Positions 11,298-37,285 of a stretch of 64,000 nucleotides of DNA are shown piece by piece. The DNA comes from Macrostomum lignano. Taxonomy: Eukaryota. Position 1 is the first letter of the stretch; the number at the start of each line of letters is the position of its first letter. The notes under the pieces were generated by a model. That model saw only the letters and a program-made list of their open reading frames with translations, made no database searches and was not told the origin of the DNA. The stretch spans positions 1 through 64,000 of the forward strand of contig NIVC01000512.1 of the NCBI GenBank assembly GCA_002269645.1, read 5' to 3'. A program made the translations under genes and the position numbers.

Positions 11298-11310
11298 CAG
11301 ACAGACAGAC

Positions 11311-11387
<77 letters not shown>

Positions 11388-11437
11388 GGCAGGCAGGCAG
11401 GCAGGCAGGCAGACACTAAGAAAGAGACAGACAGACA
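11298..11437. repeat. (CAGA)n/(CAGG)n microsatellite
   Basis: Seen directly. Confidence 0.97.
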
Positions 11438-11468
11438 AACAGCGCAAAATTCGTATATAGATTCGCAC

Positions 11469-16826: not shown

Positions 16827-19800
16827 ATGCCGCCAGCTGCTCCCATGCAGCACAGGAGTCCGCTGCTCCAGGCCATGCCCTTGCTGCTCCTGCTGCTGCT
16901 CCTGCTGCTGCCCAACGCCTCGCTGGGCCAGAGAGCTCGACAGCGACACAAGCAGCGCTGGAGAAGGCTGCCCGCCAAGCAGCTGCCATCAAGTGAGTGC
17001 GGCCACGAGTTTCACGACGCTCAGTCCAAGTGGCTGCAGTCCGACCTCGTCCTGCGCGCCACCTGGCGGGCAAGCGACGAGTCAACGCCGACCAAAAACG
17101 GCGCTTACAACATCTCCATGACGGTCGGGTCGCAGCTGAAGCCGTGGCGGCAGAACCTGGAGGGCCGGCGCATCACGGTCGGCACATTCAACCGGACCCA
17201 GGTGCGCCAGCAGCGAGCCAGGCAGCGGCAGACCTGCATGCCGTGCGACCTGCGCCGGCGCCCAGCTGGCTACGTGTTCTTCCTGACGGCCACGCGAGAC
17301 CCCGGCTTCTTCCGCCTGGCCTTCCTGCCTGCGCGCTTCAAGAAGAAGCTGAAGAAAAAGTTCAACCGGGTGCAGTGCAACGAGATGCGGGCCTGCCGTG
17401 AGTTTTTAACCATAGATTTTGCTGGCCCTCTAGTTAATCAGAATTGAGGAGGCGGGGTGGCTAAAATATGACAAAGAGCTACCAGCTCTGTGCACTGGCT
17501 TTTGCTATGCCCTGCTGGTGTACATCAGAAAGCGGAGTGCTTACGGCACTACAATTTATAAGTTGAACTTTCTTTTTTTCTTTAATCAGAATATTTGGTC
17601 ATTCGAGTTATTCGGACATTTTCCATGTGTATGTATGTAAATCGTGCAAATCTCAGTGGAAATTTAGCTTACTTGACTGTCTCTGATTGCATTTCTACGA
17701 AAATTATTGTGAAAAACTGATGTCGTATGAATCAAGTTTGAATTAAGAAATTAGATAAGGCTGATTTCACTGGTATCTTGTCTTGCTCTTACTTGGGATT
17801 TCGTCTTCAGCTTTGGAAGCAATCAAGATTGGCTCTCTGTGTTAGCTCGACAACTCTTTATAGTTTCACGATATTTCTGCCAAAAATTTTGGCAACAACA
17901 AGTAACTTCTTTCTTTTCCCGCTACTTTGCTTTTATATTTCTTCCCTAGCTTCTTTATATTTCTTCCCGGTCTCCCACGGCCAAAAGCATGCAGGCATGC
18001 AATCATCATTTTCTGCAAGATGGGGTTATTATAATGTAATTATCTATTCACGTACCTGGCAAGGCTGTCTTTTCCTGTCCGAAGTAGTTCATCTTAAAAG
18101 ACGTAGAGATAAGGATTCTTTTCAGGGATATTGCATTGTGCTGGATTTGTTCTCCTAATTACTTGCCAAGGCTACAGGAAATCATCATCTGGGCAGCTGA
18201 CTGTACAAACCGACGATTCACCCGGGGCTTCAAAAGAGTCATAAAGCTGAAGAATGAGTTCTTAGAAAATGACTGTGAAGACTGTAGACGCCACGCTACT
18301 CATATTGAAACTGATGGCTGCAAGCTCGCAATATGCAAATCTTACTGAGCTGTCAATTTTTCACTAAACTTTTGCTTTTAATTCCCTCAAATTTCCTCAA
18401 AGAATGCAAGACTGGTTCCTTTGAATTACGTCAGAAAGTGTTGAGAGCTAAGATGCTCAACTTGTCAGAAATTTGTCTTCAAGCTTATCAACACTTTTTT
18501 GCGACGAGTTTTTTATATCCATTAAAGGATGTCTGTTCTGACACAGATTATTGCAAGATTACCAGCTAGCTTTCAACCCAGTGGTACTGACACTTCGGCA
18601 CAGGCTTAGTAGAGCTCGAAAAGTGGGACTAAAGACTGAAGCAACGAAAAGAAACGAAAGATGGTCGAAAGTGGACTCAGAAAGCCTGGACTGGCTTCTC
18701 GAAGAAACCCGAGATTCTCTCGGGGGGGGGGCATACAAAATTGCTTTTGCGGTTGAGTTTCCAATTAAACTTGCTTTAAAGAAAAATAGCGCAGGCAATG
18801 GGAAAAGCTTTGAGTTCAAGAAGAGGACTTTGGGGATTGAATGATAGTAAGAAGAAAGGGGGGGGGTAAAAAATCAGAAAACAGCCAGATGAGGAAACCG
18901 TGGAAGATTTTCGACCTTACTTATCCGCTCGAGAGGGAATCAAATGAAGATTTACGTCGCGAGGATTTGGAGCGGGCGGCTGGGCGGCTCACTGACAGCT
19001 GCGCAGGCCCGGATGTCCCACCAAATTCTGTACGGTTGTTTATCCCGAGAGCCAGGCTTTCCGCGGGCCTGAAGCTGCACTATAACTTCTCCACTCAGCT
19101 CCCGTAGGTATACTGATGTTCGAACAGATATGAACAAAAATTTGCCGCTTTGGATTCGAAAATAAAAAAACAATAGTGCAGACAGTTGCGAACTCAGACA
19201 ACAGAGATCAGCAAGCAACAGCAGAAAAGAACAGGGTCACAATGGTATGCCTTGGAGCTGGACTCAAAAAGCGCGATGTGCTCCCCTTTCCATAACACAA
19301 ACTTTACCGAGCAGAATAATTTTAGGCAGAATAAATATTTCTTAGTATCCCTTAAGCGCACCCCTTAGGTTCCTAAGCGTTATCAGGCGATCTGCTGAGG
19401 TATTTTAGTTTGGTTTATAAGACTTTCTAAAGGGTGGATACCGACTGTTTTATCGGAGAATGCCTTAGAGGCTTCTGCATGCTTACTGGCAAACAAAATA
19501 GCTTTTTGTCTGCCGATAAGCAAAGTGCTGGTGCAATTCGAAAGAGATTTTTGTTTCAGTCATTTATCAGTTCCAACAAATTAAACCCCAGTCTTATTCG
19601 CCGACTATCAATCGCTGCAGGTGTTGAAACTACAATATGCGGTAAGCCGTTCGATCAAGTCGGTCCCCTTTTACCAACAGGCTGTTCCTGTGTTAAAGAA
19701 TTAAAGAGAAGTTTCTTAACAGGCCTTCGAAAGGCTGCCCTAACACAATTAGCAAGCATTGAGGCGGCGTGTCACTCACCCCCTCACCTTGCTGTGCGGC

Positions 19801-22800
19801 AGTGTAGGAGTACAGTGTATGCTCGAACGGGCCTACTACTAGCAATATCAGTTGCAATTTGCAATCCCTGCAGGCAACGAAATGCACAGTTGAAAGTGTC
19901 GAGTGCAGTGAAACCATAGAGACGTAATTTTGAGCACATTTTGTATCTTCCAATTTCATAACCAAATCTTACCTCAGCTGTATGGACGCTGATGGTCGTA
20001 TTTACGCTCGTAATGTAACACAATTATATTTATATATTTATACAAACATTTATTCCATGATTGCTTAAGCCACTTCTTCTGCGCATTTAAGTACACGAAT
20101 TCACCTTCTTATTATTAGACAAATAACTCCTCAGGGTTCTAGACTCACTGTATTCCGATCCTAAGTTTTAGTTATTAATCATAGTGAATTTTTAACAACG
20201 TGATGTGAATATTGGTCTCGATGAATGGGATCATCCGCCGTCAATTTTCGAGCGAACTGATCTAAATTACGCGTGTAGGTTAAGAATGAAGACACAAAAA
20301 TCAAGGAACGCTCCGACGGTACTAATTGTTTAAGTTTTGATTGTCGCACTTGAAGCTCTTTATCTATAGAATACTCGCACATCGTACTCTTTTCCTTAAC
20401 CAAAACGTTTGTTACAAGGAAGTTTTTAAAAAAATGCAAATTGCCAATTTTCCTTTTCCAGCGCGTCCCCCGCAACTGGTGAAGGAGATGCGCAAACGAA
20501 TCCGAAGGATCAGCCGCAGGCGCGGTGGCAGCCGTGGGATGCGGCTGCGACTGCGGCTGGTGTGCCGAGCGAACGGGCTGCCCCGTCCGAGGCCGCTATG
20601 GCTGCGCGACGGCGAGCCAGTTAAACTGGGCCGGGGCAGGGTGGCGCAGTTCAAGACCAGGTGAGTTTCTTAGAGGCAGGGGCTGTGAGCACCCTGGCGC
20701 ACTTTAGGCGACATTGTCATACAACCGGCGAGAGGCATTGATGATGCATCCGATTATCGCTCTACAGTCGCTGCATTTGATTTCGTGCACGACCACTGCT
20801 GTACACCCTGTGATCAAGTGCGCGCTTGGGGGCTAGCGAAATCGGGCATGACTTGGTCATTTCTGCAAATCATCTGCCCTCGTCTCTGTTTAATTTATTA
20901 CAAGTGTCTCTCCCTCTCTGGTCTGTAGCTCAGTCTTGTTATTCCTATCACTCTCCCTCTCTGGTCTGTAGTTCAGTCTTGTTATTCTTATCTCTCTCCC
21001 TCTCTGGTCTGTAGCTCAGTCTTGTTATTCCTATCACTCTCCCTCTCTGGTCTGTAGCTCAGTCTTGTTATTCCTATCACTCTCCCTCTCTGGTCTGTAG
21101 TTCAGTCTTGTTATTCTTATCTCTCTCCCTCTCTGGTCTGTAGTTCAGTCTTGTTATTCTTATCTCTCTTCCTCTCTGGTCTGTAGTTCAGTCTTGTTAT
21201 TCTTATCTCTCTCCCTCTCTGGTCTGTAGTTCAGTCTTGTTATTCTTATCTCTCTCCCTCTCTGGTCTGTAGTTCAGTCTTGTTATTCTTATCACTCTTC
21301 CTCTCTGGTCTGTAGTTCAGTCTTGTTATTCTTATCTCTCTCCCTCTCTGGTCTGTAGTTCAGTCTTGTTATTCTTATCACTCTTCCTCTCTGGTCTGTA
21401 GTTCAGTCTTGTTATTCTTATCTCTCTCCCTCTCTGGTCTGTAGTTCAGTCTTGTTATTCTTATCACTCTCCCTCTCTGGTCTGTAGTTCAGTCTTGTTA
21501 TTCCTATCACTCTCCCTCTCTGGTCTGTAGTTCAGTCTTGTTATTCTTATCTCTCTCCCTCTCTGGTCTGTAGTTCAGTCTTGTTATTCTTATCTCTCTC
21601 CCTCTCTGGTCTGTAGTTCAGTCTTGTTATTCTTATCTCTCTCCCTCTCTGGTCTGTAGTTCAGTCTTGTTATTCTTATCACTCTTCCTCTCTGGTCTGT
21701 AGTTCAGTCTTGTTATTCTTATCTCTCTCCCTCTCTGGTCTGTAGTTCAGTCTTGTTATTCTTATCACTCTTCCTCTCTGGTCTGTAGTTCAGTCTTGTT
21801 ATTCTTATCTCTCTCCCTCTCTGGTCTGTAGTTCAGTCTTGTTATTCTTATCACTCTCCCTCTCTGGTCTGTAGTTCAGTCTTGTTATTCTTATCTCTCT
21901 CCCTCTCTGGTCTGTAGTTCAGTCTTGTTATTCTTATCTTTCTCCCTCTCTGGTCTGTAGTTCAGTCTTGTTATTCTTATCTCTCTCCCTCTCTGGTCTG
22001 TAGTTCAGTCTTGTTATTCTTATCTCTCTCCCTCTCTGGTCTGTAGTTCAGTCTTGTTATTCTTATCACTCTCCCTCTCTGGTCTGTAGTTCAGTCTTGT
22101 TATTCTTATCTCTCTCCCTCTCTGGTCTGTAGTTCAGTCTTGTTATTCTTATCTCTCTCCCTCTCTGGTCTGTAGTTCAGTCTTGTTATTCTTATCTCTC
22201 TCCCTCTCTGGTCTGTAGTTCAGTCTTGTTATTCTTATCTCTCTCCCTCTCTGGTCTGTAGTTCAGTCTTGTTATTCTTATCACTCTCCCTCTCTGGTCT
22301 GTAGTTCAGTCTTGTTATTCTTATCACTCTCCCTCTCTGGTCTGTAGTTCAGTCTTGTTATTCTTATCACTCTCCCTCTCTGGTCTACCGTATAGTTCAG
22401 TCTTGTTTTTCTTGTCTCTCTCCCTCTCTGGTCTGTAGTTCAGTCTTGTTATTCTTATCACTCTCCCTCTCTGGTCTACCGTATAGTTCAGTCTTGTTTT
22501 TCTTGTCACTCTCCCTCTCTGGTCTGTAGTTCAGTCTTGTTTTTCTTGTCTCTCTCCCTCTCTGGTCTGTAGTTCAGTCTTGTTTTTCCTGTCTCTCTCC
22601 CTCTCTGGTCTACCGTATAGTTCAGTCTTGTTTTTCTTGTCTCTCTCCCTCTCTGGTCTACCGTATAGTTCAGTCTTGTTTTTCTTATCTCTCTCCCTCT
22701 CTGTTCTACCGTATAGTTCAGTCTTGTTTTTCCTGTCTCTCTCCCTCGCGCGGCCTTCTGATTGGCTCTTCAGTCTCACCTCTTTCCTCAGTCGCGCACT

Positions 22801-25800
22801 CTACCCCTCCTATTTTTACGACGCATCTGCACCCCCCCCCCCCTGAACAGAGACAAGGGCAAATGAGCTTTTTATTAGAGGCAGGGGGATGTGTACACCC
22901 TGGCGCAAGCGACATGTCGCACAACCGGTGAGAGGCATTACTGGCCATTCCGCCGACTCCCCTGAGCAGGCACACAAGCGCGCAGATACGTACGCAGTCA
23001 TACCCACAGGCACACACTCACACAGGGGTGTACAGCGGCCCTAACTTTATTTATCGTTAGGAATGTACACTTCACTGTGCCTGGGGGGGATATAAGATAG
23101 AAGATTGAAGTCCTGCCGTTAGCCCAACTCCTCGATAGCTCGCATGAATTCACCTCAAGTATTTTCTTCAACATTAACAGGAAAGGAATAGTCACGTCTC
23201 GTCTCGTGCTAAGAAGGGCATCGCCAGATGACGCTGGAAATTACACCTGCGTGTTCCGCAACCTGCAGGGCTCCATCAGCAGCAGCATCGTGCTGGCTGG
23301 TGAGCTGACTGCTATTTGAACTCAATCATTTTCTTAACCTTATTTGCCTTGTATTGTTCTTGCAGTAGTCAGGCTGATTGAGGGGGAGGCGAGCATGCTA
23401 ATAAAGTCTTGTTGCATCTCGAACGAAAAGGAATGCGGGGTATATCGAGTACCACAAACTTTTTTGTGAGTAAGCATCGTAAATGCATCTACCCCGCTCA
23501 AAGCCCTTACCCCGCTCTCACCCTGCGAACGCTTGAGCCAATCTCTGGGCAGTTTCGTCGGAGCAGTTTTGCTACTGTATATAAAGCGAACAACTAGAGG
23601 CGCTGGCCAACTCGTAGCTCCATTGTTAGTCTCTGAAAACCGCGAATTCAAAATTTTCATTCTATCACTCTATAACTGGTAAGCGATTTTGTTTGCCCAG
23701 TTAAACTTTAAACAACCAATCTCCACTGCTTGAAACTTAATATACGTAGACCGTAGTTCCAAAATCGCAGATAAACCCGTTTAGTGCCCAGTATTTTAGA
23801 CGCACGCAAATATGTATCCAGGCATGCTCACACCCTGGCCCTTCAGTTCGCTCGTGGAACCGACCTGGGGGACTTTCAGAGGAATGCCATAAGTTGCTGA
23901 TTTTCTAAACTAAGCGCCAAAAGTATTTAAGGAATCTTGTAGCACACCAAGTATCGTATTGACTTGTTTTTGTTACACCCAATTGGTCCCATATATGGAA
24001 TGAGCATCGGCAATGCAACAGTCTAGCGTAGACAAACGTATGTCATTCCAACAATAACTCAACTTGTCTGTGCAGTTTGTCTCATTTCAACGTTACAGCG
24101 GAAGAATTGAGCAGCTCGATGGGTCAGCAAACATCCACCACTGTGGGTAAGTGTTGTTCTGTTCAGAGCTCTATTTTAGGAGCTGCAAGCGTCTTTATTG
24201 CAACCTGTCTGTCTGTTAGTGTTGGCCAGTAACTATCTGGGGGCGGTATTCTTTTAGATGCCATTGTGAAAGTCAGCCCTGACCTATACGCAGAGCAGAC
24301 AGGGTGGGTGGGGAGAGCCGGCACAGTGGCTCAAAGCATTCGCAGACAGCTGACACACAGTTGGCAAGACTGCTTTGGTATGCGCTTTGAACGTCCAGCA
24401 TAAATAGTTAATTAGAATTGGGCTTGCTGAAACTTACTGGGCGGAGGCCGAGTGAAGCTCTAAACAGATGAATAACAAATCGATGAAAATATTCCAGCGC
24501 CCCAGCCGCAGAACTACCTGTGCAACTACAAGAATGTCACCTATTGTCTCAACGGAGGCACCTGCGTCATCAGTCGAATTACCAATAAGCCATCCTGCCA
24601 GTGAGTCAAACCTGCTTTCTGATCAAATCAAACAAGCTCAATTGGAATAATTCACTTTGATCTGATTAGTAATGACAGCTTGATGCCCATTTCGATCAGC
24701 TGCATCCTTGTGCACAAGGGATGTAGATTCATGTACTATTTAAGAAGGCACAATGCACGGATTACCGTATATATTATAGCAATAGCTGGGAACAGAATTC
24801 TATGTCCATTAGTTTTACTGCACAACCGGTACAATTAATTTACTAATAAAAATTCCAGATGTCCAGAAGAGTACATGGGGTTCTTCTGCGAGAATATCAA
24901 CATTGAGTACATGTACCGGGAGCAGATCAGGCAGAGTAAATTTTTCTTGCACAGCTTTCTAAGATTAATTAATAATATTTATGTCAATCAGATTTTCAAT
25001 CCAATTTCAACATTATCCAGTGCTGCATTTGATTTAGCTCACTTATAAAACCGAGAGTGGTCTAATGCCTTTGCTAATAGCTTTACAGTGTTGATTTTAG
25101 CAACGGATGCTTTGTTGATTATTCAGCTATTAATAACAATATCGCGTTATAACCATTGTTGATGAGTGGCACTAATTCATTTGCTTGAAACCGATTGCCA
25201 ATTTTTTAACCAGGTGCATATCGGCTGTAAACCTCAACGACACTGACTGCGTGGATTTGCAGAGTACGCTAGCAACCAATTTTTAACTTGGAATTCTATT
25301 TATAGTAATGCCTGTGTTGCTAAGACTTACAAATAAATTGGTTAGACAGCAAGACAGTCGTTAAGTGCGTATAAAACTGAATTTACAGCTTAAGCAAAGC
25401 ATTCTCATCAAAGCAAGAGCAAAGTGGCTCCGCACTTCAAAAGAGAATTCCAAAATTGCGGCGAATCGCTCGCGTGATCAACACCAGCTCCAGTCTCCAG
25501 CCTGCAGAGCAAATTGTGTTTGGTTTGAGTAAAGCAATAGAGGCATTGCAGACTCTCCTCTTCATCTAACTTGATCAGAATTCGGACAGGCAACAGGGAG
25601 GGCTGGCAGTAGGATATTGGAAGCTGTGTGGCTGATGAAGCTCAGCTACCAAGGCATCCGGACCCCTTGGACAGATCAGCTCAGAGACTAAGGAGAGTAA
25701 ACTCTGAGCTGCCAATGCTTTTGCAAGGTCAGGTCTAGGAAGATCCCGGAAGTCCACTATATCCTGTAATCAGCCTCCATCGCTCAATCTCAACCGCATT

Positions 25801-27749
25801 GCAGCCTACATTGAGCAGCATTTGCACCGTCGAGTCGATCGACTGTTGACCGCAGTTGCGGTAGCCATCGTAGCAGCGGTGCTCTGCTCCATCCTGCTGC
25901 TCTCCTGGTACTTGGCTAGGTTAGAAAAGTGCTGAATAAACTTCATATTTACTTTAGAAAGCCTTCCGTAGGGATCAACGGAATTGCACTACTAATAAGT
26001 AGAATGTTGCGTACATTCAGACCCGTTTACGGTTCAGTGGTAAATATTCCAATATAGTTGTTCATTAGCATTGGTTTTGTTTGCTCAGCTTGTAAGCCGC
26101 TTTCAGTAGTATATTGCATTGTTACCGACCTGCAATGGCTTGATGCTTTACAATAATGTTGTGTCACCTTATCCACCAAACCGACATGCGCCTGGTTGCA
26201 ATTGTTGTACTCCATTTGCCTTTATTTTTATTTTTACCACCGTCGCCGCCTGCTCTGTCTTTAGCTGCCTCTTCTTCCTGCATCAGCCTCTCTTCCTCAT
26301 CAAAATATTGCAGGCCTAATTCGAAATTTAGCAGTGGCAGGCGTGTCCGAGACGACTCTCTCCACCACGACCCTTGTGGCCGGTCTCGCCTTGATAGCCC
26401 TGTTTGTTGTGCTCCTGGCTATCTGTTGTATGGTTGCGGACATGTGAGTCCTGTTTATTAAGTATTTAAACAAATCATTTCAAAATCAGAACGCGCTCTT
26501 TTAGGTTCGTCAGGTCATAAATCGACACAGCTGTATTGTCCTGTCACATTGTTTCTCAGAGAATCGATGTCGTGATGACCTGTTTGTTTCAGTTTAAACT
26601 TCTGTTATAAAGTAGTTTGAGGCAAAGACAAAGCTTTTGAACATTCTGTTAAGGTTTCTTTTGAAAAAAAACATTTCAGACGTCGAAGACTGGATAGGAA
26701 GCATTGGACTGTCCCTGCGGGAAAGCGCTCTTCTGATGAGGAGGTGAGTGAAAGCAAGTGTCCAGTGATCACCGGTTCCCTAGTGATCACCGGTTCCCTA
26801 GTGATCACCGGTTCCCCTAGTGATCACCGGTTCCCTAGTGATCACCGGTTCCCTAGTGATCACCGGTTCCCTAGTGATCACCGGTTCCCTAGTGATCACC
26901 GGTTCCCTAGTGATCACCGGTTCCCTAGTGATCACCGGTTCCCTAGTGATCACCGGTTCCCTAGTCGTAAGAGAACGCAACACTTAAGTTAATAGGTGCT
27001 TATTTAAAGTCCTCATTTTGCTCAACAAAAATTTGCTTCACAGGATATCGTAGGAACGTTTCAGTTTTTAGCGCTAGAGATTGACAGTTGTTAAAATCTG
27101 ATGACTTCGGAGTTCCAGAAAGTTGGTGCTGAAAACTGGAAATCGCCAGTCTCGTTGAAGAAGCATATTAAATAAAAATTTCACCTTCAAATGCACTCCC
27201 GTAGATTTGTAGCGTTTAATTCTCTTACCACCCGGGGTCCTTGTCGACTTAGCGGTCCAGCCCAGCAAATTTTGTCCCATCAAAACTTCAGGAGCTGGGA
27301 AGTCGCCTGACATCATCAATTCGGTCACCCGCGCCGCATTTTGACGCGTCCACAATGACGGAATTTCCCGTGCACCCAGTGCCCCCTGTGCCTCCCCACA
27401 GTCAGCAGCCTCTGCCGCATCTGCAACCTCAAAACCAGTTCTATCTCTACCAGAATCCTCGGGAACCCAGCCTGAGCAATGGCCCAACCACCGTGGCGGT
27501 ACCGACGGCTGCTGCAGAGCCTCGGCGCAGTCACAACTCCGGTGCTGCTGGCGGCGGCGCGCCACTGTCGTACACCTACCGCACTCCCGGCCCGTCATCC
27601 AGCCAGCCCGTCGAGTTCCGCATTCAGCCAGTATTTAATTACGCCACTGCGGCCGCTGGCACCTCAGACGCGGCTGACAATCTGGACGACCGAAATGTTG
27701 ACGGCGAGGCTATTGACCTGTTGAAGGAGTTCAAGCGAGTTGAACTACT

Positions 27750-27785
<36 letters not shown>

Positions 27786-27912
27786 ACAACAACAACAACC
27801 ACAGCAGCAACAGCTGAAGCAACAACACAAAAAAGCGTCTGTAAAGCGACCGCTGCCTTTTCCGGGTCATGGCACGCCTTCATCTGCTTCTACTAGTAGC
27901 AGCAGGCAGTAA
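16827..27912 (+). CDS. Neuregulin/Vein-like EGFR-ligand precursor (signal peptide, N-terminal domain, Ig, linker, EGF, TM, polyQ cytoplasmic tail), about 638 aa
   Basis: Exons 16827-17397, 20462-20660, 23181-23299, 24099-24146, 24498-24600, 24859-24935, 25805-25919, 26680-26743, 27292-27912; all GT-AG, phases consistent, total 1917 nt. Ig motifs LVCRANGLPRP..WLRDG and DDAGNYTC. EGF spacing C-x7-C-x5-C-x10-C-x-C-x8-C with an intron between C4 and C5. TM followed by RRRR. Alternative exons at 25214-25263 and 26314-26443. Confidence 0.85.
18841..19660 (+). mobile_element. Possible decayed DIRS/Ngaro-type retrotransposon RT relic in intron 1 of the neuregulin-like gene
   Basis: Collinear peptides interrupted by stops: KIFDLTYP..ESN, G...LDSKSA...P, PKRYQAIC*GILVWFIR and SLIRRLSIAAGV....GKPF resemble my recollection of Ngaro/DIRS RT motifs. 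No YxDD seen and spacing is longer than expected. Confidence 0.35.
20905..22745. repeat. 43-bp minisatellite CTCTCTGGTCTGTAGTTCAGTCTTGTTATTCTTATCTCTCTCC, about 43 copies
   Basis: Tandem periodicity in intron 2 of the neuregulin-like gene; 47-bp variants at the right end. Confidence 0.98.
22875..23044. mobile_element. Small MITE-like element with imperfect TIRs; a related copy starts at 20670
   Basis: Left end TTAGAGGCAGGGGGATGTGTACACCCTGG, right end reverse complement TTAGGGCCGCTGTACACCCCTG. 22875-22939 resembles 20670-20739. Confidence 0.4.
25214..25263 (+). CDS. Candidate alternative EGF C-terminal exon of the neuregulin-like gene (CISAVNLNDTDCVDLQ)
   Basis: Acceptor TTTTAACCAG, donor GTACGC. 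Enters in phase 2 and leaves in phase 1, the same as exon 24859-24935, and supplies two Cys (C-x10-C). Confidence 0.5.
26314..26443 (+). CDS. Candidate alternative transmembrane exon of the neuregulin-like gene
   Basis: Acceptor AATATTGCAG, donor GTGAGT. Phase 1 to phase 2 like exon 25805-25919. Encodes LIRNLAVAGVSETTLSTTTLVAGLALIALFVVLLAICCMVAD and joins in frame to the RRRLDRK exon. Confidence 0.7.
26765..26964. repeat. 18-bp minisatellite GTGATCACCGGTTCCCTA x11
   Basis: Identical copies starting 21 bp after the donor at 26744. Confidence 0.98.
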
Positions 27913-28928
27913 GGCACTGACCCGTGTATTCCCCTCACTGCTTAGGAACCGGGTTTCGTAACCCTGGAGTTCAGGCGTTCAAGCCACGAGTTCACGGCAA
28001 AGTACGAATCGATGGCTATTATACTACTAAGTCTCGGGCTCGCCTTGAGCCTGTTCCGGCAGCAAGACATTTCCATTGCAGCATCAGTAACGAATTTTTC
28101 CCTGCAGAAGGCAATGCAAGCTCAAGCTTTCATCCGAAAATACCAATTATGTAGTAAAGTTCAGAGTGAACTAATGACATAGTTTTTCTACGTGATCTAT
28201 CGTTGGAAAATTGCCAGTTACAAGGCTAAATCAAGCCGCCTACCCTTCGAAGTCGGCAAACCAATATATGCCAGTTTATATAGATAGCTAGCTGTAATGA
28301 ACTACTCACTAGTAGCTTTAGTGAACATACAAATACTTTTCAATGCAGACCGTCGCTAGGAATGCACGCCTGATCTTTTAGGCACCGCTACATGTACAAC
28401 TCTCCAGTTCATTGTGCGTATCATTTATATCAGCTTCAGTTCCGCTGCACACAACAGCTGACTGATTCGACTCACTCCCTTGTTCGATGCAATTGCTTTA
28501 GACCGGAACTTGATGACAAATCTAATTGTGTTAGTTGTTGCTTTTGGCATGTGTTATAGCGTAGTTTTTTAATAAATTATAATGGCAATAAGTGTTACTC
28601 CATTACGGAGGACTCGTATTTGTTGTCTTTGATTTCTGCAGCAAACAGTTTCTTTGGAGTTTTTTATTGGCAAAGTCGTAGCCAACACAAGGACCACTAG
28701 GAACAATTCGGCCTTGGCCCGACAATGCTAGAATTTTATACTCGAAATCAACTCTTGGGCGTCACCCATTGGGCGATTAGTTAACATTGGATGTTTCAAT
28801 CCCTTTCAGGGCGTTGCCATGGATTTTATGGTGGGGGACAAAGCCAAGAATTCTACATATTGTATATGTACATGACGAAATCCCTATATGTACATTATTT
28901 TCAGAATGGTGCTGTCAGTGATTATTTT

Positions 28929-30070
28929 AGCGCCGCAGGCACTCATTTAAGCGCCGCAGGCACTCATTTTAGCGCCGCAGGCACTCATTTTAGCGCCGCA
29001 GGCACTCATTTTAGCGCCGCAGGCACTCATTTTAGCGCCACAGGCACTCATTTTAGCGCCACAGGCACTCATTTCATTTTGGCGCCACAGGCACTCATTT
29101 TAGCGCCGCAGGCACTCATTTTAGCGCCGCAGGCACTCATTTTAGCGCCGCAGGCACTCATTTTAGCGCCATAGGCACTCATTTTAGCGCCGCACTCATT
29201 TTAGCGCTGCTGGCACTCATTTTAGCGCCATAGGCACTCATTTTAGCGCCGCAGGCACTCATTTTAGCGCCGCACTCATTTTAGCGCCGCAGGCACTCAT
29301 TTTAGCGCCATAGGCACTCATTTTAGCGCCGCAGGCACTCATTTTAGCGCCGCAGGCACTCATTTTAGCGCCGCAGGCACTCATTTTAGCGCCGCAGGCA
29401 CTCATTTTAGCGCCGCAGGCACTCATTTTAGCGCCGCAGGCACTCATTTTAGCGCCGCAGGCACTCATTTTAGCGCCGCAGGCACTCATTTTAGCGCCGC
29501 AGGCACTCATTTTAGCGCCATAGGCACTCATTTTAGCGCCGCAGGCACTCATTTTAGCGCCGCAGACACTCATTTTAGCGCCATAGGCACTCACTTTAGC
29601 GCCGCACTCATTTTAGCGCCGCAGGCACTCATTTTAGCGCCGCAGGCACTCATTTTAGCGCCATAGGCACTCATATTAGCGCCGCAGGCACTCATTTTAG
29701 CGCCGCAGACACTCATTTTAGCGCCATAGGCACTCATTTTAGCGCCGCAGGCACTCATTTTAGCGCCGCAGGCACTCATTTTAGCGCCGCAGGCACTCAT
29801 TTTAGCGCCGCAGGCACTCATTTTAGCGCCGCAGGCACTCATTTTAGCGCCGCAGGCACTCATTTTAGCGCCGCAGGCACTCATTTTAGCGCCGCACTCA
29901 TTTTAGCGCCGCAGGCACTCATTTTAGCGCCGCAGGCACTCATTTTAGCGCCGCAGGCACTCATTTTAGCGCCGCAGGCACTCATTTTAGCGCCGCAGGC
30001 ACTCATTTTAGCGCCGCAGGCACTCATTTTAGCGCCGCAGGCACTCATTTTAGCGCCGCAGGCACTCATT
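28929..30070. repeat. 21-bp minisatellite GCGCCGCAGGCACTCATTTTA, about 54 copies
   Basis: Seen directly; intergenic. Confidence 0.98.
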
Positions 30071-30578
30071 TTTGTCGCCCTGAAGCAAAATTATTGATTT
30101 CCATAACAGGTCAACAAAGGTGGGGTGGGGGGGACAAACCATTAGCATGTCCCCCCATAGCTCTTACTGGGGGGACCACTTTCACTCTTCACCGATCGCC
30201 CCACCCCACATTACGCTCACGGTATTGTACGCTTTCACTCAGCTCATAAATATATCGACCCAGAGTATCTCGCTCTAGAGGCTGTTTCGTTTTTCATCGT
30301 TTCAATAGCAACAGAATATAGTTTGTCTTTCATCTCGAGTTATTCTAGCAACCAAAGAATATAGACCTAGTAACAAAAATAGGCCCTAACCATTTTTACT
30401 AGGTATCTAAAATTTTAATTATTCTGGAGACTAGATTGTCAATATTTTTTGTCATTTAATTTTGTGTTGAAAAAATAATTTTCTCCTATCTCGGTAGTGT
30501 TTTTTCATGCAATTGACCCCCCAAAAAAAAATTTACATGACCTTTGAGTTTTACGTCCTGCTATATACAGTGGTCCTG

Positions 30579-33500
30579 CACTTCCCCTCCCGCACTTCCC
30601 CCCCGGCATTTCCCCCCGGCACTTCCCCTCCCTCACTTCCCCTCCCTCACTTCCCCTCCGGCACTTCCCCTCCCTCACTTCCCCTCCGGCACTCCCCCCG
30701 GCACTTCCCCTCCGGCACTCCCCCCGGCACTTCCCCTCCGGCACTTCCCCTCCGGCACTTCCCCTCCGGCACTTCCCCTCCCGCACTTCCCCTTCCTCAC
30801 TTCCCCTCCGGCACTTCCCCTCCGGCACTTCCCCTCCGGCACTTCCCCTCCGGCACTTCCCCTCCGGCACTTCCCCTCCCTCACTTCCCTTCCCTCACTT
30901 CCCCTCCGGCACTTCCCCTCCCGCACTTCCCCTCCGGCACTTCCCCTCCCGCACTTCCCCTCCGGCACTTCCCCTCCGGCACTTCCCTCCGGCACTTCCC
31001 CTCCGGCACTTCCCCTCCGGCACTTCCCCTCCGGCACTTCCCCTCCCGCACTTCCCCCCGGCACTTCCCCTCCCTCACTTCCCCTCCGGCACTTCCCCTC
31101 CGGCACTTCCCCTCCCTCACTTCCCCTCCGGCACTTCCCCTCCGGCACTTCCCCTCCGGCACTTCCCCTCCGGCACTTCCCCTCCCGCACTTCCCCTCCG
31201 GCACTTCCCCTCCGGCACTTCCCCTCCGGCACTTCCCCTCCGGCACTTCCCCTCCGGCACTTCCCCTCCGGCACTTCCCCTCCGGCACTTCCCCTCCGGC
31301 ACTTCCCCTCCCGCACTTCCCCTCCCTCACTTCCCCTCCCTCACTTCCCCTCCGGCACTTCCCCTCCCGCACTTCCCCCCTCACTTCCCCTCCGGCACTT
31401 CCCCTCCGGCACTTCCCCTCCCGCACTTCCCCTCCGGCACTTCCCCTCCCTCACTTCCTCTCCGGCACTTCCCCTCCGGCACTTCCCCTCCCGCACTTCC
31501 CCTCCCGCACTTCCCCCCCGGCATTCCCCCCGGCACTTCCCCTCCCTCACTTCCCCTCCGGCACTTCCCCTCCGGCACTTCCCCTCCCTCACTTCCCCTC
31601 CGGCACTTCCCCTCCCGCACTTCCCCCCCGGCATTTCCCCCCGGCACTTCCCCTCCCTCACTTCCCCTCCCTCACTTCCCCTCCGGCACTTCCCCTCCCT
31701 CACTTCCCCTCCCGCACTTCCCCCGGCACTTCCCCTCCGGCATTTCCCCCCCGGCACTTCCCCTCCCTCACTTCCCCTCCCTCACTTCCCCTCCCTCACT
31801 TCCCCTCCGGCACTTCCCCTCCCGCACTTCCCCCCCGGCATTTCCCCCCCGGCACTTCCCCTCCCTCACTTCCCCTCCGGCACTTCCCCTCCGGCACTTC
31901 CCCTCCGCCACTTCCCCTCCGGCACTTCCCCTCCGGCACTTCCCCTCCGGCACTTCCCCTCCCTCACTTCCCCTCCCTCACTTCCCCTCCGGCACTTCCC
32001 CTCCCTCACTTCCCCTCCCTCACTTCCCCTCCGGCACTTCCCCTCTCGCACTTCCCCTCCGGCACTTCCCCTCCGGCACTTCCCCTCCGGCACTTCCCCT
32101 CCCTCACTTCCCCTCCGGCACTTCCCCTCCGCCACTTCCCCTCCCGCACTTCCCCTCCGGCACTTCCCCTCCGGCACTTCCCCTCCGGCACTTCCCCTCC
32201 CGCACTTCCCCCCCGGCACTTCCCCTCCCTCACTTCCCCTCCGGCACTTCCCCTCCGGCACTTCCCCTCCGGCACTTCCCCTCCGGCACTTCCCCTCCGG
32301 CACTTCCCCTCCGGCACTTCCCCTCCGGCACTTCCCCTCCCGCACTTCCCCTCCCTCACTTCCCCTCCCTCACTTCCCCTCCGGCACTTCCCCTCCCGCA
32401 CTTCCCCTCCCTCACTTCCCCTCCGGCACTTCCCCTCCGGCACTTCCCCTCCCGCACTTCCCCCCGGCACTTCCCCTCCCTCACTTCCTCTCCGGCACTT
32501 CCCCTCCGGCACTTCCCCTCCCTCACTTCCTCTCCGGCACTTCCCCTCCGGCACTTCCCCTCCCGCACTTCCCCTCCCGCACTTCCCCCCCGGCATTTCC
32601 CCCCGGCACTTCCCCTCCCTCACTTCCCCTCCGGCACTTCCCCTCCGGCACTTCCCCTCCCTCACTTCCCTCTCGGCACTTCCCCTCCCGCACTTCCCCC
32701 GGCACTTCCCCTCCGGCACTTCCCCTCCGGCACTTCCCCTCCGGCACTTCCCCTCCCTCACTTCCCCTCCGGCACTTCCCCTCCGGCACTTCCCCTCCGG
32801 CACTTCCCCTCCCGCACTTCCCCTCCGGCACTTCCCCTCCGGCACTTCCCCTCCGGCACTTCCCCTCCGGCACTTCCCCTCCCGCACTTCCCCTCCCTCA
32901 CTTCCCTTCCGGCACTTCCCCTCCCGCACTTCCCCTCCCTCACTTCCCCTCCGGCACTTCCCCTCCGGCACTTCCCCTCCCTCACTTCCCCTCCGGCACT
33001 TCCCCTCCCGCACTTCCCCCCCGGCATTTCCCCCCGGCACTTCCCCTCCCTCACTTCCCCTCCCTCACTTCCCCTCCGGCACTTCCCCTCCCTCACTTCC
33101 CCTCCCACACTTCCCCCGGCACTTCCCCTCCGGCATTTCCCCCCCGGCACTTCCCCTCCCTCACTTCCCCTCCCTCACTTCCCCTCCCTCACTTCCCCTC
33201 CGGCACTTCCCCTCCCGCACTTCCCCCCGGCATTTCCCCCCGGCACTTCCCCTCCCTCACTTCCCCTCCGGCACTTCCCCTCCGGCACTTCCCCTCCGCC
33301 ACTTCCCCTCCGGCACTTCCCCTCCGGCACTTCCCCTCCGGCACTTCCCCTCCCTCACTTCCCCTCCCTCACTTCCCCTCCGGCACTTCCCCTCCCGCAC
33401 TTCCCCTCCCTCACTTCCCCTCCGGCACTTCCCCTCTCGCACTTCCCCTCCGGCACTTCCCCTCCGGCACTTCCCCTCCGGCACTTCCCCTCCCTCACTT

Positions 33501-34735
33501 CCCCTCCGGCACTTCCCCTCCGCCACTTCCCCTCCCGCACTTCCCCTCCGGCACTTCCCCTCCGGCACTTCCCCTCCGGCACTTCCCCTCCCGCACTTCC
33601 CCCCGGCACTTCCCCTCCCTCACTTCCCCTCCGGCACTTCCCCTCCGGCACTTCCCCTCCGGCACTTCCCCTCCGGCACTTCCCCTCCGGCACTTCCCTC
33701 CGGCACTTCCCCTCCGGCACTTCCCCTCCCGCACTTCCCTCCCTCACTTCCCCTCCCTCACTTCCCCTCCGGCACTTCCCCTCCCGCACTTCCCCTCCCT
33801 CACTTCCCCTCCGGCACTTCCCCTCCGGCACTTCCCCTCCCGCACTTCCCCCCGGCACTTCCCCTCCCTCACTTCCTCTCCGGCACTTCCCCTCCGGCAC
33901 TTCCCCTCCCTCACTTCCTCTCCGGCACTTCCCCTCCGGCACTTCCCCTCCCGCACTTCCCCTCCCGCACTTCCCCCCCCGGCACTTCCCCTCCGGCACT
34001 TCCCCTCCCGCACTTCCCCTCCCTCACTTCCCCTCCCTCACTTCCCCTCCGGCACTTCCCCTCCGGCACTTCCCCTCCCTCACTTCCCCTCCGGCACTTC
34101 CCCTCCGGCACTTCCCCTCCCGCACTTCCCCTCCGGCACTTCCCCTCCCTCACTTCCTCTCCGGCACTTCCCCTCCGGCACTTCCCCTCCCGCACTTCCC
34201 CTCCGGCACTTCCCCTCCGGCACTTCCCCTCCCGCACTTCCCCTCCCGCACTTCCCCCCTCGGCATTTCCCCCCGGCACTTCCCCTCCCTCACTTCCCTC
34301 CGGCACTTCCCCTCCGGCACTTCCCCTCCCTCACTTCCCCTCCGGCACTTCCCCTCCCGCACTTCCCCCCCGGCATTTCCCCCGGCACTTCCCCTCCGGC
34401 ACTTCCCCTCCCGCACTTCCCCCCGGCATTTCCCCCGGCACTTCCCCTCCCTCACTTCCCTCCCTCACTTCCCCTCCGGCACTTCCCCTCCAGCACTTCC
34501 CCGCCCGCACTTCCCCTCCCGCACTTCCCCCCCGGCATTTCCCCCCGGCACTTTTCCTCCCTCACTTCCCTCCCGCACTTCCCCCGGCACTTCCCCTCCC
34601 GCACTTCCCCCCCGGCATTTCCCCCCGGCACTTCCCCTCCGGCACTTCCCCTCCGGCACTTCCCCTCCGGCACTTCCCCCCCGGCACTTCCCCCCCGGCA
34701 CTTCCCCTCCGGCACTTCCCCTCCGGCACTTCCTT
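30579..34735. repeat. 14-bp satellite CACTTCCCCTCC(GG/CG/CT), about 4.2 kb
   Basis: Seen directly; extreme C-rich plus strand and G-rich minus strand. Confidence 0.99.
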
Positions 34736-35189: not shown

Positions 35190-35460
35190 ACATTCTCTCT
35201 TCTCTCTTTTATCCCCACTTCTCTTTCCCCTTTTTAGTTCCGTATTGGAGCGCGAGTCCAGCTGTGCAAGTTATGGGGATGAAATTAAGCTAGCTTAGTT
35301 CCTTATTTTTCCTTTCCATGCTTCCATTCCACTTCATTGGCCAGGCGGTTACCCAGCCCCATCCGCACTGCTATGTATATGCCCTCGCGGAAGCTGAAGC
35401 ATCCAAGTACGACTTGTATTGCACCATTTTGTAGATTCTTTCGTATCAGCCGCAGATGCC

Positions 35461-36885: not shown

Positions 36886-37285
36886 GTGTGAACATAATGA
36901 TCGTAGAGTACAGAGCTCTGGATAATGAGTCATAGGCGTGAACATAATGATCGTAGAGTACAGAGCTTTGGGCAATGAGTCATAGCTGTGAACATAATGA
37001 TCGTAGAGTACAGAGCTCTGGACAATGAGTCATAGGTGTGAACATAATGATCGTAGAGTACAGAGCTCTGGACAATGAGTCATAGCTGTGAACATAATGA
37101 TCGTAGAGTACAGAGCTCTGGACAATGAGTCATAGGTGTGAACATAATAATCGTAGAGTACAGAGCTTTGGACAATGAGTCATAGGTGTGAACATAATGA
37201 TCGTAGAGTACAGAGCTGTGGACAATGAGTCATAGGTGTGAACATAATGATCGTAGAGTACAGAGCTCTGGACAATGAGTCATTG
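36836..37285 (+). repeat. 50-bp tandem array x9 whose first unit is the end of orphan ORF copy 1
   Basis: Unit GTGTGAACATAATGATCGTAGAGTACAGAGCTTTGGACAATGAGTCATAG; unit 1 ends at the ORF stop codon. Confidence 0.97.

What the first reader, a model, noticed from the sequence alone, without database searches (positions are those of the whole stretch)
25805..26743. Two interchangeable transmembrane exons, one of them open in two frames
Seen: 25805-25919 (YIEQHLHRRVDRLLTAVAVAIVAAVLCSILLLSWYLA) and 26314-26443 (LIRNLAVAGVSETTLSTTTLVAGLALIALFVVLLAICCMVAD) both run phase 1 to phase 2 and both join in frame to the RRRLDRK exon. Their stalks differ sharply: basic/His-rich versus Ser/Thr-rich. If both are included, the second is read in another stop-free frame (RPNSKFSSGRR...YGCGH) and ends at TSKTG-stop. 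Established: the juxtamembrane stalk controls ADAM/rhomboid shedding of EGFR ligands. Inference: with the two EGF exons, a 2x2 splice code could set receptor binding and shedding separately. This is the best candidate for an undescribed system in the window.
Basis: partly seen in the sequence, partly recalled or inferred. Interest (0 to 1): 0.75.

Follow-up and report, generated by a model that had tools for sequence, protein, structure and literature searches.

The report
Alternative membrane-anchor exons in flatworm neuregulin
A neuregulin-type growth-factor gene of the flatworm Macrostomum lignano carries two different exons that can each supply its membrane anchor, and the one missing from every gene model of this gene is the older and better conserved, so the gene can probably switch how its signal is tethered to the cell.

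Summary
Exon A (25805-25919, 115 nt) and exon B (26314-26443, 130 nt) each have AG/GT borders, run phase 1 to phase 2, encode one transmembrane helix and join in frame to the RRRLDRK exon.

The gene is a Macrostomum lignano neuregulin-type EGFR ligand: signal peptide, Ig, EGF, TM and tail. Every retrievable model of this gene uses exon B.

Exon A is nevertheless a real coding exon.
- An A-type exon of exactly 115 nt, with the same phases and splice borders, sits at the same place in two old paralogs (about 45% protein identity, introns unalignable).
- Its alignment score is 86-102, against 31±4 for shuffled peptides.
- Synonymous sites are saturated, as expected under protein-level constraint.
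- One paralog has only the A-type anchor, and a UniProt model splices into it.

Exon B is less conserved and is absent from that paralog.

"Open in two frames" is true but is chance: 40% of codon-shuffled versions of exon B keep that frame open.

The second EGF exon (25214-25263) is also conserved. The only model that uses such an exon pairs it with the A-type anchor, which hints at coupling rather than a free 2x2 code.

No transcript shows exon A in use in this gene. Any effect on shedding is inference.

The parts
16827..17397 (+). Exon e1: start codon, signal peptide (poly-Leu) and a Cys-containing N-terminal domain
   Evidence: Hand-built model. It matches M. lignano proteins P0001 and P0151. 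There is a weak, sub-threshold Pfam NRG2_N match (E=0.037).
20462..20660 (+). Exon e2: first half of the Ig (I-set) domain
   Evidence: Ig_3 2.4e-9, I-set 5.3e-9.
23181..23299 (+). Exon e3: second half of the Ig domain
   Evidence: It is the best-conserved block against paralog L001 (79% nt identity).
24498..24600 (+). Exon e4: EGF domain, Cys1 to Cys4, ends in phase 2
   Evidence: It aligns to the human NRG1 EGF domain in PDB.
24859..24935 (+). Exon e5a: canonical EGF C-loop (CPEEYMGFFCE...), 77 nt, phase 2 to 1
   Evidence: It is used in P0001, P0003 and P0151. With e4, its best PDB match is pro-neuregulin-1 beta (E=3.2e-6).
25214..25263 (+). Exon e5b: alternative, non-canonical EGF C-loop (CISAVNLNDTDCVDLQ), 50 nt, phase 2 to 1, with an N-x-T sequon
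   Evidence: Its counterpart is L002 16856-16905 (50 nt, donor gtacga against gtacgc here), used in UniProt model P0157. In the shuffle test L002 to window, p=0.002 and the best hit falls exactly here. A candidate counterpart lies at L001 18923-18987.
25805..25919 (+). Exon A: A-type stalk and TM anchor, 115 nt, phase 1 to 2, weak donor gttaga. This is the conserved, probably older anchor.
   Evidence: Counterparts of exactly 115 nt lie at L001 19665-19779 and L002 19577-19691. Scores are 86-102 against 31±4 for shuffles. pN is 0.41 against pS 0.79.
26314..26443 (+). Exon B: B-type Ser/Thr-rich stalk and TM anchor, 130 nt, phase 1 to 2, strong pyrimidine tract and gtgagt donor. This is the anchor used in the annotated models.
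   Evidence: It is used in P0001, P0003 and P0151. Its counterpart is L001 19993-20128 (136 nt), with only weak similarity (p=0.05). L002 has none.
26680..26743 (+). Exon e7: cytoplasmic juxtamembrane RRRLDRK..., takes two bases from A or from B
   Evidence: RRRLD is conserved in all three paralogs.
27292..27912 (+). Exon e8: cytoplasmic tail with a poly-Gln tract, and the stop codon
   Evidence: It matches P0001, P0003 and P0151. It is weakly conserved in L001 and L002.

Best explanation
The window holds a Macrostomum lignano neuregulin-type EGFR-ligand gene: signal peptide, N-terminal domain, Ig, EGF, one TM helix and a cytoplasmic tail. Its extracellular stalk plus membrane anchor is encoded twice, by two unrelated cassette exons, A and B. 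The two exons share the same phase class.

Splicing in exactly one of them keeps the reading frame. Including both shifts the frame and ends the protein early, and so does skipping both after an EGF exon.

Exon B is the default. It has strong splice signals and is used in all the models. Exon A is the older anchor. It has been kept under protein-level selection in three old paralogs, and it has a weakened donor site in the two genes where it competes with B. It is therefore most likely a regulated, minor alternative.

The switch replaces the stalk and the TM helix while leaving the receptor-binding and cytoplasmic parts unchanged. The A stalk is short and basic (R-x-x-D-R-[LV]-L-T...L-S/A-W-Y-L-A-R). 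The B stalk is longer, with an A-V-A motif, and is Ser/Thr- or Ala/Ser-rich.

The expected effect is a change in how the precursor is cleaved, sorted or retained, that is, tethered versus shed ligand, or a different subcellular destination.

Shown here: the frames, the splice borders, the conservation, the use of B in this gene, and the use of an A-type exon in a paralog model.

Inferred: the use of A in this gene, mutual exclusivity, and every functional consequence.
For: Gene identity:
- Ig domains pass the Pfam cut-offs.
- The EGF domain's best solved relative is human pro-neuregulin-1 beta (E=3.2e-6), followed by other ErbB ligands.
- Near-identical M. lignano proteins were found.

Frames:
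-. Only the four patterns 'one EGF exon + one TM exon' give a full-length anchored ligand.

Exon B is used:
- P0001, P0003 and P0151 use it in this gene. P0002 and P0152-P0156 use B' in paralog Mlig015540.

Exon A is functional:
- Its counterpart in L001 is YLSSRSVRQTDRLLTSVAIGTACCVIGALFLLAWYLA. Its counterpart in L002 is YVDRRVNRAIDRVLTATTIGVAATVIIGIVVLSWYLA.
- Both are 115 nt, have AG/GT borders and the same phases, and lie between the EGF exons and e7.
- The surrounding introns are unalignable.
- Smith-Waterman scores are 86 and 102, against 31±4 for shuffles (maximum 49; 0 of 1000 shuffles reach the observed score).
- Against A', nucleotide identity is 50%, third-position identity 35%, second-position identity 65%, pS 0.79 and pN 0.41.
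- Exon A is 43-46% identical between paralogs. This is level with the Ig and N-terminal domains and above exon B at 27%.
- A' is intact, with one synonymous change, in all three recent copies of Mlig015540.
- L002 has no B-type exon at all.
- UniProt model P0157 of that paralog splices e4-e5b-A.

Splice-site pattern:
- The A donor is gttaga in the window and gtttgt in L001, where B is present. It is consensus gtaaga in L002, where there is no B.
Against: - No transcript, EST or gene model in the searchable collections contains exon A of this gene. All three models use B. The collection seems to hold no transcript-derived fragments of this gene at all, so this absence is weak evidence.
- A and B are 394 nt apart and B has strong splice sites. 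No mechanism that would skip B after A is included was found.
  - Inverted repeats and duplex energies are at background.
  - There are no shared Rbfox-type or similar motifs.
- A and B are not detectably homologous (p=0.17), unlike classic mutually exclusive pairs.
- The premature stop of the A+B form lies only 46 nt from the last exon junction (13 nt in L001). By the 50-55 nt rule known from mammals it would not be removed by NMD. The frame alone may therefore not enforce exclusivity.
- Comparative evidence comes only from paralogs within one species. No orthologs from other species could be retrieved.
Confidence: 0.55

Rival explanations
1. Coupled modules rather than a free 2x2 code. The four cassettes are nested, in the order e5a [e5b A] B. 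They are used as two packages. One is e5a+B: a canonical receptor-binding loop with the B anchor. The other is e5b+A: a glycosylated, non-canonical loop with the ancestral anchor.
For: - The exon order e5a, e5b, A, (B) is the same in all three loci.
- The only model with a b-type EGF exon joins it directly to the A-type anchor (P0157).
- Every model with an a-type exon in the two-anchor genes uses B.
- In L002 the a-type exon ends in a stop codon, so only e5b can reach A there.
- All three b-type loops carry an N-x-S/T sequon and lack the Y/F-x-G motif.
- With e5b, the match to NRG1 ends at Cys5.
Against: - It rests on about ten computational gene models and no reads.
- All four combinations are in frame in the window.
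- The L001 e5b candidate differs in length (65 nt, C-x15-C) and was found by eye after a shuffle test that was not significant (p=0.12).
Confidence: 0.3
2. Exon A is included together with B, not instead of it. The product is a ligand held by the A helix with a short frame-shifted tail (RPNSKF...TSKTG*) and without the normal cytoplasmic domain. Alternatively the transcript is simply unproductive.
For: - B has a strong acceptor 394 nt after A's donor, so A-to-B is the naive splice.
- The shifted frame is open through B in both two-anchor paralogs.
- The stop lies 46 nt and 13 nt before the last junction, so the mRNA could be stable.
Against: - Openness of the shifted frame is expected in 40% of codon-shuffled exons.
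- The shifted peptides are not conserved (p=0.16).
- In L002 there is no B. There A must join e7 directly, and the A|e7 junction W-Y-L-A-R|RRRLD is conserved in all three loci.
Confidence: 0.15
3. In this gene exon A is a recently retired relic. Only B is ever used, and A's conservation reflects past use, or present use only in the paralogs.
For: - All three models of this gene use B.
- A has a non-consensus donor (T at +3) and a poor pyrimidine tract.
Against: - The frame is still open only in the coding phase, and the length and both splice dinucleotides are intact. The same holds independently in L001.
- Introns of the same age retain no similarity.
- The weak donor recurs in the other two-anchor paralog, which fits regulation better than decay.
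Confidence: 0.12
4. Exon A acts as an alternative last coding exon. Read-through of its donor gives a tail-less, membrane-anchored ligand (...WYLARLEKC*).
For: - P0157 ends ...WYLAR, at the stop made by the L002 intron's g|taa.
- The window read-through stops after 5 codons.
Against: - No poly(A) evidence.
- In L001 the read-through runs on for about 45 codons.
- The e7-like and e8-like exons downstream of A in L002 are conserved.
- The end of P0157 may be a prediction artefact.
Confidence: 0.05

Closest known systems
Vertebrate neuregulin-1 (NRG1) isoform system
   Same: - The architecture is Ig + EGF + single TM + cytoplasmic tail.
- The EGF domain's best solved relative is NRG1 beta.
- The last EGF loop is encoded by alternative exons (alpha/beta), and the alternative domains are mutually exclusive modules (PMC11360300).
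- Some isoforms end before the TM and are secreted, as with the paralog's e5a exon that carries a stop.
- Bilaterian, including flatworm, 'NRG-type' ligands are already described (PMC4914847).
   Different: - As far as I know, all membrane-bound NRG1 isoforms use one common TM exon. NRG1 varies the linker before it and the tail after it (own knowledge).
- Here the stalk and the TM helix are themselves swapped.
- The Pfam Neuregulin intracellular domain was not detected.
- The b-type EGF loop lacks the receptor-binding consensus, unlike both NRG1 alpha and beta.
C. elegans LIN-3 S/L/XL splice forms
   Same: It is an EGFR ligand whose alternative splicing changes the segment between the EGF domain and the TM helix. 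That change alters dependence on a membrane protease: LIN-3L needs the rhomboid ROM-1 and LIN-3S does not (PMC519001). This is the best precedent for the mechanism proposed here.
   Different: LIN-3 uses an alternative donor and an extra cassette to insert 15 or 41 residues before a single TM exon. The TM helix itself does not change.
Drosophila Dscam1 exon 17.1/17.2 and, from my own knowledge, N-cadherin exon 18a/18b
   Same: Two mutually exclusive exons each encode the TM segment of a single-pass Ig-superfamily protein. The choice sends the protein to different compartments: TM1 to dendrites and TM2 to axons (PMC2566808).
   Different: - The gene family differs: these are adhesion receptors, not growth-factor precursors.
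- Those exon pairs are recognisably related duplicates. A and B here are not.
Drosophila Spitz/Keren/Gurken versus Vein, a division of labour among EGFR ligands
   Same: The tethered, protease-dependent ligands and the secreted Ig-containing ligand (Vein) exist side by side (PMC4914847; PMC519001). The M. lignano family seems to produce both kinds from single genes, by splicing.
   Different: In Drosophila these are separate genes. The determinants of rhomboid cleavage in the Spitz TM were not tested here.

Membership tests
Neuregulin-type (Ig + EGF + TM) EGFR ligand | Immunoglobulin (I-set) domain N-terminal to the EGF domain | tested here: met
   Pfam Ig_3 scores 38 bits against a cut-off of 30. 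I-set scores 36.5 bits against a cut-off of 23.7.
Neuregulin-type (Ig + EGF + TM) EGFR ligand | Six-cysteine EGF domain of the ErbB-ligand type | tested here: met
   With e4+e5a, the best PDB hits are pro-neuregulin-1 beta (E=3.2e-6) and NRG1 (5.2e-6), then betacellulin, epigen, EGF, TGF-alpha and Spitz. Pfam EGF alone is below its cut-off (17.3 against 21.5 bits).
Neuregulin-type (Ig + EGF + TM) EGFR ligand | Single TM helix after the EGF domain | tested here: met
   A Kyte-Doolittle scan gives exon A a maximum of 2.88 and exon B a maximum of 3.11. Each is followed by RRRLDRK.
Neuregulin-type (Ig + EGF + TM) EGFR ligand | Neuregulin intracellular region (Pfam PF02158) | tested here: not met
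   No hit at E<=1 on the full protein or at E<=10 on the TM and tail segments. There is only a memory-based resemblance of RRRLDRRLRRS to human KKLHDRLRQSLRSER.
Neuregulin-type (Ig + EGF + TM) EGFR ligand | NRG-type N-terminal domain | tested here: inconclusive
   Pfam NRG2_N gives E=0.037 and 14.7 bits against a cut-off of 27.
Neuregulin-type (Ig + EGF + TM) EGFR ligand | Binds and activates an EGFR/ErbB receptor | not testable with these tools
   This needs a binding or signalling assay.
Mutually exclusive exon pair | Neighbouring exons with the same phase class, each of which alone keeps the frame | tested here: met
   A is 115 nt and B is 130 nt. Both are 1 mod 3 and run phase 1 to 2. The same holds in L001, with 115 and 136 nt.
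Mutually exclusive exon pair | Transcripts contain exactly one of the two | not testable with these tools
   No transcript data could be reached. The models show B alone in this gene and A alone in paralog 3.
Mutually exclusive exon pair | The two exons are homologous, from a tandem exon duplication | tested here: not met
   A against B scores 26, with shuffles at 22±4 (p=0.17). A' against B' gives p=0.42.
Mutually exclusive exon pair | A known exclusion mechanism: steric, U2/U12 incompatibility, competing RNA pairing, or NMD | tested here: inconclusive
   - The A-B intron is 394 nt, so the mechanism is not steric.
- All sites are GT-AG.
- Inverted repeats and duplex energies are at background.
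- Including both exons gives a premature stop, but within 46 nt of the last junction.
NRG1 alpha/beta-type alternative EGF C-loop exons | Two alternative exons that each encode the Cys5-Cys6 loop | tested here: met
   e5a is 24859-24935 and e5b is 25214-25263. Both run phase 2 to 1. The b-type exon is used in P0157 and is conserved between the window and L002.
NRG1 alpha/beta-type alternative EGF C-loop exons | Both variants keep the receptor-binding C-loop consensus (aromatic-x-Gly, C-x8-C) | tested here: not met
   The b-type loops are C-x10-C (C-x15-C in the L001 candidate). They have no Y/F-x-G motif and carry an N-x-S/T sequon. With e5b, the PDB match to NRG1 ends at Cys5.

The most novel reading that the evidence does not exclude
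An old, conserved two-module splice switch in a flatworm neuregulin family.

- One module pairs a canonical receptor-binding EGF loop with a younger, cleavable anchor (B). This would be a shed, paracrine ligand.
- The other module pairs a glycosylated, non-binding or differently binding loop with the ancestral neuregulin-like anchor (A). This would be a tethered form, possibly used for juxtacrine or reverse signalling, or as a silent precursor.

The anchor swap itself, that is alternative non-homologous TM exons in an EGFR ligand, would be a mode of ligand regulation not described for this family.
Probability: 0.25. Interest if true: 0.7.

Novelty: new variant of a known kind. Interest (0 to 1): 0.55.

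Why it matters
EGFR and neuregulin signalling depends on how the membrane-bound precursor is released or retained. The known routes to variation are separate genes (Drosophila), linker insertions (C. elegans LIN-3) or alternative linkers and tails (vertebrate NRG1).

A gene that swaps the stalk and the TM helix as one cassette would be a natural experiment. It would show what the anchor itself contributes to shedding, intramembrane cleavage, sorting and reverse signalling.

The animal is a transgenic-capable regeneration model, and EGFR ligands are already tied to stem-cell and regeneration control in its relatives (PMC4914847).

There is also a practical point. The current gene models of this family miss a conserved coding exon, and a conserved alternative EGF exon, in two of the three paralogs.

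Tried and rejected
1. Searched for an exon-A-containing protein of this gene.
   - Profile search with the A-form segments of two paralogs.
   - Full listing of the 90% clusters.
   - None was found. Only paralog 3 has an A-type model.
2. Looked for homologs outside M. lignano.
   - The word-index searches returned only M. lignano proteins or nothing.
   - The exhaustive HMMER search was swamped by giant multi-Ig proteins. Its only new relative was P0013, a third M. lignano paralog.
4. RNA-pairing model for exon choice.
   - An inverted repeat that would loop out exon A, with a TTCTAA/TTAGAA core, appeared in both two-anchor loci.
   - Duplex-energy scans ranked it 7th in the window and outside the top 8 in L001. 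It was dropped as background.
5. Splicing-factor motifs (TGCATG, CU-rich, UG-rich, branch-point-like) showed no shared placement.
6. A second coding frame in exon B was rejected.
7. Tandem-duplication origin of A and B: no detectable similarity.
8. Recent constraint, from the three 94-96% identical copies of Mlig015540. A' and e5b' are intact with 0-1 substitutions, but the introns are also about 1-3% diverged, so the test has no power.
9. A-type anchor as the ancestral NRG anchor.
   - All three A-type exons, and neither B-type exon, resemble the human NRG1 stalk and TM (p = 0.036, 0.006 and 0.003, against 0.26 and 0.46).
No PDB chain matched and no paper text held it.
   - This is kept only as a lead.
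10. A literature search for the paralog gene IDs found nothing.
Full report
**What is at the coordinates**

The window is animal DNA, rich in minisatellites.

Exon A lies at 25805-25919 and is 115 nt. It follows ...cattgcag and precedes gttaga. It encodes YIEQHLHRRVDRLLTAVAVAIVAAVLCSILLLSWYLA.

Exon B lies at 26314-26443 and is 130 nt. It follows ...tattgcag and precedes gtgagt. It encodes LIRNLAVAGVSETTLSTTTLVAGLALIALFVVLLAICCMVAD.

Both exons start with two bases that complete a codon and end with two bases of the next codon. Both join in frame to 26680-26743, which encodes RRRLDRKHWTVPAGKRSSDEE.

With A and B both present, B is read as RPNSKF...YGCGH and translation ends at TSKTG*.

**The gene**

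I assembled a ten-exon model by hand:

| Exon | Coordinates | Content |
|---|---|---|
| e1 | 16827-17397 | signal peptide and a Cys-containing N-terminal domain |
| e2 | 20462-20660 | Ig, first half |
| e3 | 23181-23299 | Ig, second half |
| e4 | 24498-24600 | EGF, Cys1 to Cys4 |
| e5a | 24859-24935 | EGF C-loop, canonical |
| e5b | 25214-25263 | EGF C-loop, alternative candidate |
| A | 25805-25919 | A-type stalk and TM anchor |
| B | 26314-26443 | B-type stalk and TM anchor |
| e7 | 26680-26743 | cytoplasmic juxtamembrane segment |
| e8 | 27292-27912 | cytoplasmic tail and stop |

- Pfam finds the Ig domain above its cut-offs and a weak NRG2_N match.
- The EGF domain's best solved relative is human pro-neuregulin-1 beta (E=3.2e-6), followed by other ErbB ligands.
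- The nearest proteins are from Macrostomum lignano.
- 'NRG-type' ligands (Ig + EGF + TM) are already known in bilaterians, including flatworms (PMC4914847). The gene class itself is therefore not new.
- The Pfam Neuregulin intracellular domain is not detected.

**Which anchor do existing models use?**

All three retrievable models of this gene use e5a+B. They are UniProt A0A1I8HAW4 (P0001), A0A1I8H3C4 (P0003) and A0A1I8GRW9 (P0151).

A 45%-identical paralog, Mlig015540 (P0002 and five cluster mates), also uses a B-like anchor.

No model of this gene contains exon A. The collection appears to hold no transcript-derived fragments of this gene of any kind, so this absence says little.

**Exon A is a conserved coding exon**

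In the genomic locus of Mlig015540 (L001), an open frame lies between its EGF exon and its B-type exon. It encodes YLSSRSVRQTDRLLTSVAIGTACCVIGALFLLAWYLA. It is exactly 115 nt, follows ...cgacag, precedes gtttgt, and has the same phases.

A third paralog is Mlig001833 (L002, found through P0013). It has YVDRRVNRAIDRVLTATTIGVAATVIIGIVVLSWYLA. This exon is again 115 nt and is bordered by ...cctcag and gtaaga.

Several results show that this is protein-level conservation.
- Outside the exons the loci do not align.
- Exon A scores 86 and 102 against these intervals. Shuffled peptides score 31±4, with a maximum of 49, and 0 of 1000 reach the observed score.
- Between A and A', nucleotide identity is only 50%. 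Third codon positions are near random (35%) and second positions are 65% identical.
- pS is 0.79 (saturated) and pN is 0.41. This is the signature of selection on the protein.
- Each A-type exon is open only in its coding frame.
- Exon by exon, A is 43-46% identical between paralogs. That is as conserved as the Ig and N-terminal domains and more conserved than B at 27%.
- A' is intact in all three recent copies of Mlig015540, but these copies are too similar for a test.

**Exon B is younger or looser**

- B and B' are only marginally alike (p=0.05).
- L002 has no B-type exon at all. The A-type exon is the only TM-coding stretch between its EGF exons and e7.
- A and B are not detectably related (p=0.17).
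- A lead from memory only: all three A-type exons, but neither B-type exon, resemble the human NRG1 stalk and TM segment. I could not verify the human sequence with the tools.

**An A-type exon in an independent model, and the second EGF exon**

UniProt A0A1I8IZT6 (P0157, paralog 3) reads ...GKPHCV|CLIVSNETAENCVEFQ|TYVDRRVNRAIDRVLTATTIGVAATVIIGIVVLSWYLAR. That is e4, then a b-type EGF exon, then the A-type anchor.

- The b-type exon in L002 (16856-16905) is 50 nt with donor gtacga. The window's e5b is 50 nt with donor gtacgc.
- The two peptides share C-x10-C-V-[DE]-[LF]-Q and an N-x-T sequon.
- The L002 peptide's best match in the window interval is exactly e5b (p=0.002). The reverse test is weaker (p=0.10).
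- L001 has a looser candidate, CLPDTANGSTAATPRDCAEFL, 65 nt, with the same phases.
- In L002 the a-type exon runs straight into a stop codon (CEKIDIY*). This is the NCBI model P0013, a secreted Ig-EGF form.
- With e5b, the similarity to NRG1 ends at Cys5. The b-type loop lacks the aromatic-x-Gly motif.

**Frame arithmetic**

There are 16 inclusion patterns for e5a, e5b, A and B. Only the four 'one EGF exon + one TM exon' patterns give a full-length anchored protein. Skipping all four is in frame but leaves no complete EGF domain and no TM helix. Every other pattern stops early.

Including e5a with neither TM exon gives a 383-residue secreted Ig-EGF protein. Its stop lies in the last exon.

**The 'two frames' point**

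The shifted frame of B is open.
- The same is true of 40% of codon-shuffled versions of B, and of exons e4, e5a and e7 of this gene.
- It is also open in B', but the two shifted peptides are not alike (p=0.16).
- The resulting stop lies 46 nt (window) or 13 nt (L001) before the last junction. By the 50-55 nt rule known from mammals, the double-inclusion mRNA would not be an NMD target.

I treat the open second frame as chance.

**How the choice might be made**

- Where A competes with B, its donor has T at +3: gttaga in the window and gtttgt in L001. Where it is the only anchor, the donor is consensus gtaaga (L002).
- B and B' have long pyrimidine tracts and gtgagt or gtaagt donors.
- This fits B as the default and A as a regulated minor choice.
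- I found no mechanism that would skip B once A is in. The A-B intron is 394 nt, and all sites are GT-AG.
- Inverted repeats and duplex energies are at background. No shared regulatory motifs were found.

This is the main gap in the mutually exclusive reading. It keeps the A+B rival alive.

**Likely function (inference)**

The swap changes about 12-19 stalk residues and the helix.
- The A-type stalk is short and basic, with an invariant D-R-[LV]-L-T entry and an L-[SA]-W-Y-L-A-R exit.
- B-type stalks are longer. They share an A-V-A motif and are rich in Ser/Thr or Ala/Ser.

Two precedents make the swap likely to matter.
- In C. elegans LIN-3, a 15-residue juxtamembrane insert makes the ligand depend on the rhomboid ROM-1 (PMC519001).
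- In Drosophila Dscam1, two alternative TM exons send the protein to dendrites or to axons (PMC2566808).

From these I expect different cleavage, retention or sorting of the two precursors. Which form is shed is not established.

**Verdict**

The finding is real and more than chance.

Three corrections apply.
- The unannotated exon A is the ancient one.
- The second frame of B is noise.
- The little model evidence there is points to coupled modules (e5a+B and e5b+A) rather than a free 2x2 code.

Use of exon A in this gene still needs transcript evidence.

Noticed in passing
window 25214-25263 (also L002 16856-16905, L001 18923-18987): An alternative EGF C-loop exon (e5b). It is non-canonical: C-x10-C, no aromatic-x-Gly motif, and a conserved N-x-S/T sequon. 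It is present in all three paralog loci and is used in UniProt model P0157.
   Followed up: yes
L002 16207-16257: In paralog Mlig001833 the canonical EGF exon ends in an in-frame stop right after the domain (CEKIDIY*). This gives a secreted, Vein-like Ig-EGF ligand (NCBI model P0013). The window gene can reach a similar product by skipping both TM exons (383 aa, stop in the last exon).
   Followed up: partly
window 26764-26965: An 18-bp minisatellite (AGTGATCACCGGTTCCCT, 11 copies) begins 20 nt after the donor of e7. Gene model P0151 reads into it (VSESKCPVITGSL), which is probably a prediction artefact.
   Followed up: no
window 20907-22747; 28924-30072; 30574-34733: Large minisatellites lie in and just after the gene. 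There is a 43-bp unit with 42 copies inside the Ig intron, and a 21-bp unit with 55 copies. A 14-bp unit with about 300 copies spans 4.2 kb, with GC 0.62-0.70 and a strong C-over-G skew. This last array gives spurious ORFs of about 1400 codons in three frames.
   Followed up: no
window 35419-36885 and 42301-43800: Two tandem copies of an intronless ORF of about 490-500 aa, 89% identical. The shared reading starts MGGFVSK, which fits a myristoylation-type N-terminus. Each copy is followed by the same 50-bp minisatellite (36837-37287 and 43752-44951). There is no confident Pfam family; the second copy gives only a weak IntS14_C match.
   Followed up: partly
window 11289-12272 (minus strand): A 327-codon ORF with a CDP-alcohol phosphatidyltransferase domain (Pfam E=1e-8).
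   Followed up: no
window 26680-26743 and exon A 25805-25919: The cytoplasmic juxtamembrane RRRLDR(R)LRRS, and the A-type R-[LV]-L-T entry to the helix, resemble human NRG1 (...KRVLTITG...KKLHDRLRQSLRSER).
   Followed up: partly
L001, L003, L004 (three copies of Mlig015540): Three 94-96% identical copies of the paralog lie on different contigs. They differ by large indels in the intron between e5b and A (289 and about 2400 gap columns). This fits the recent genome duplication of M. lignano.
   Followed up: partly
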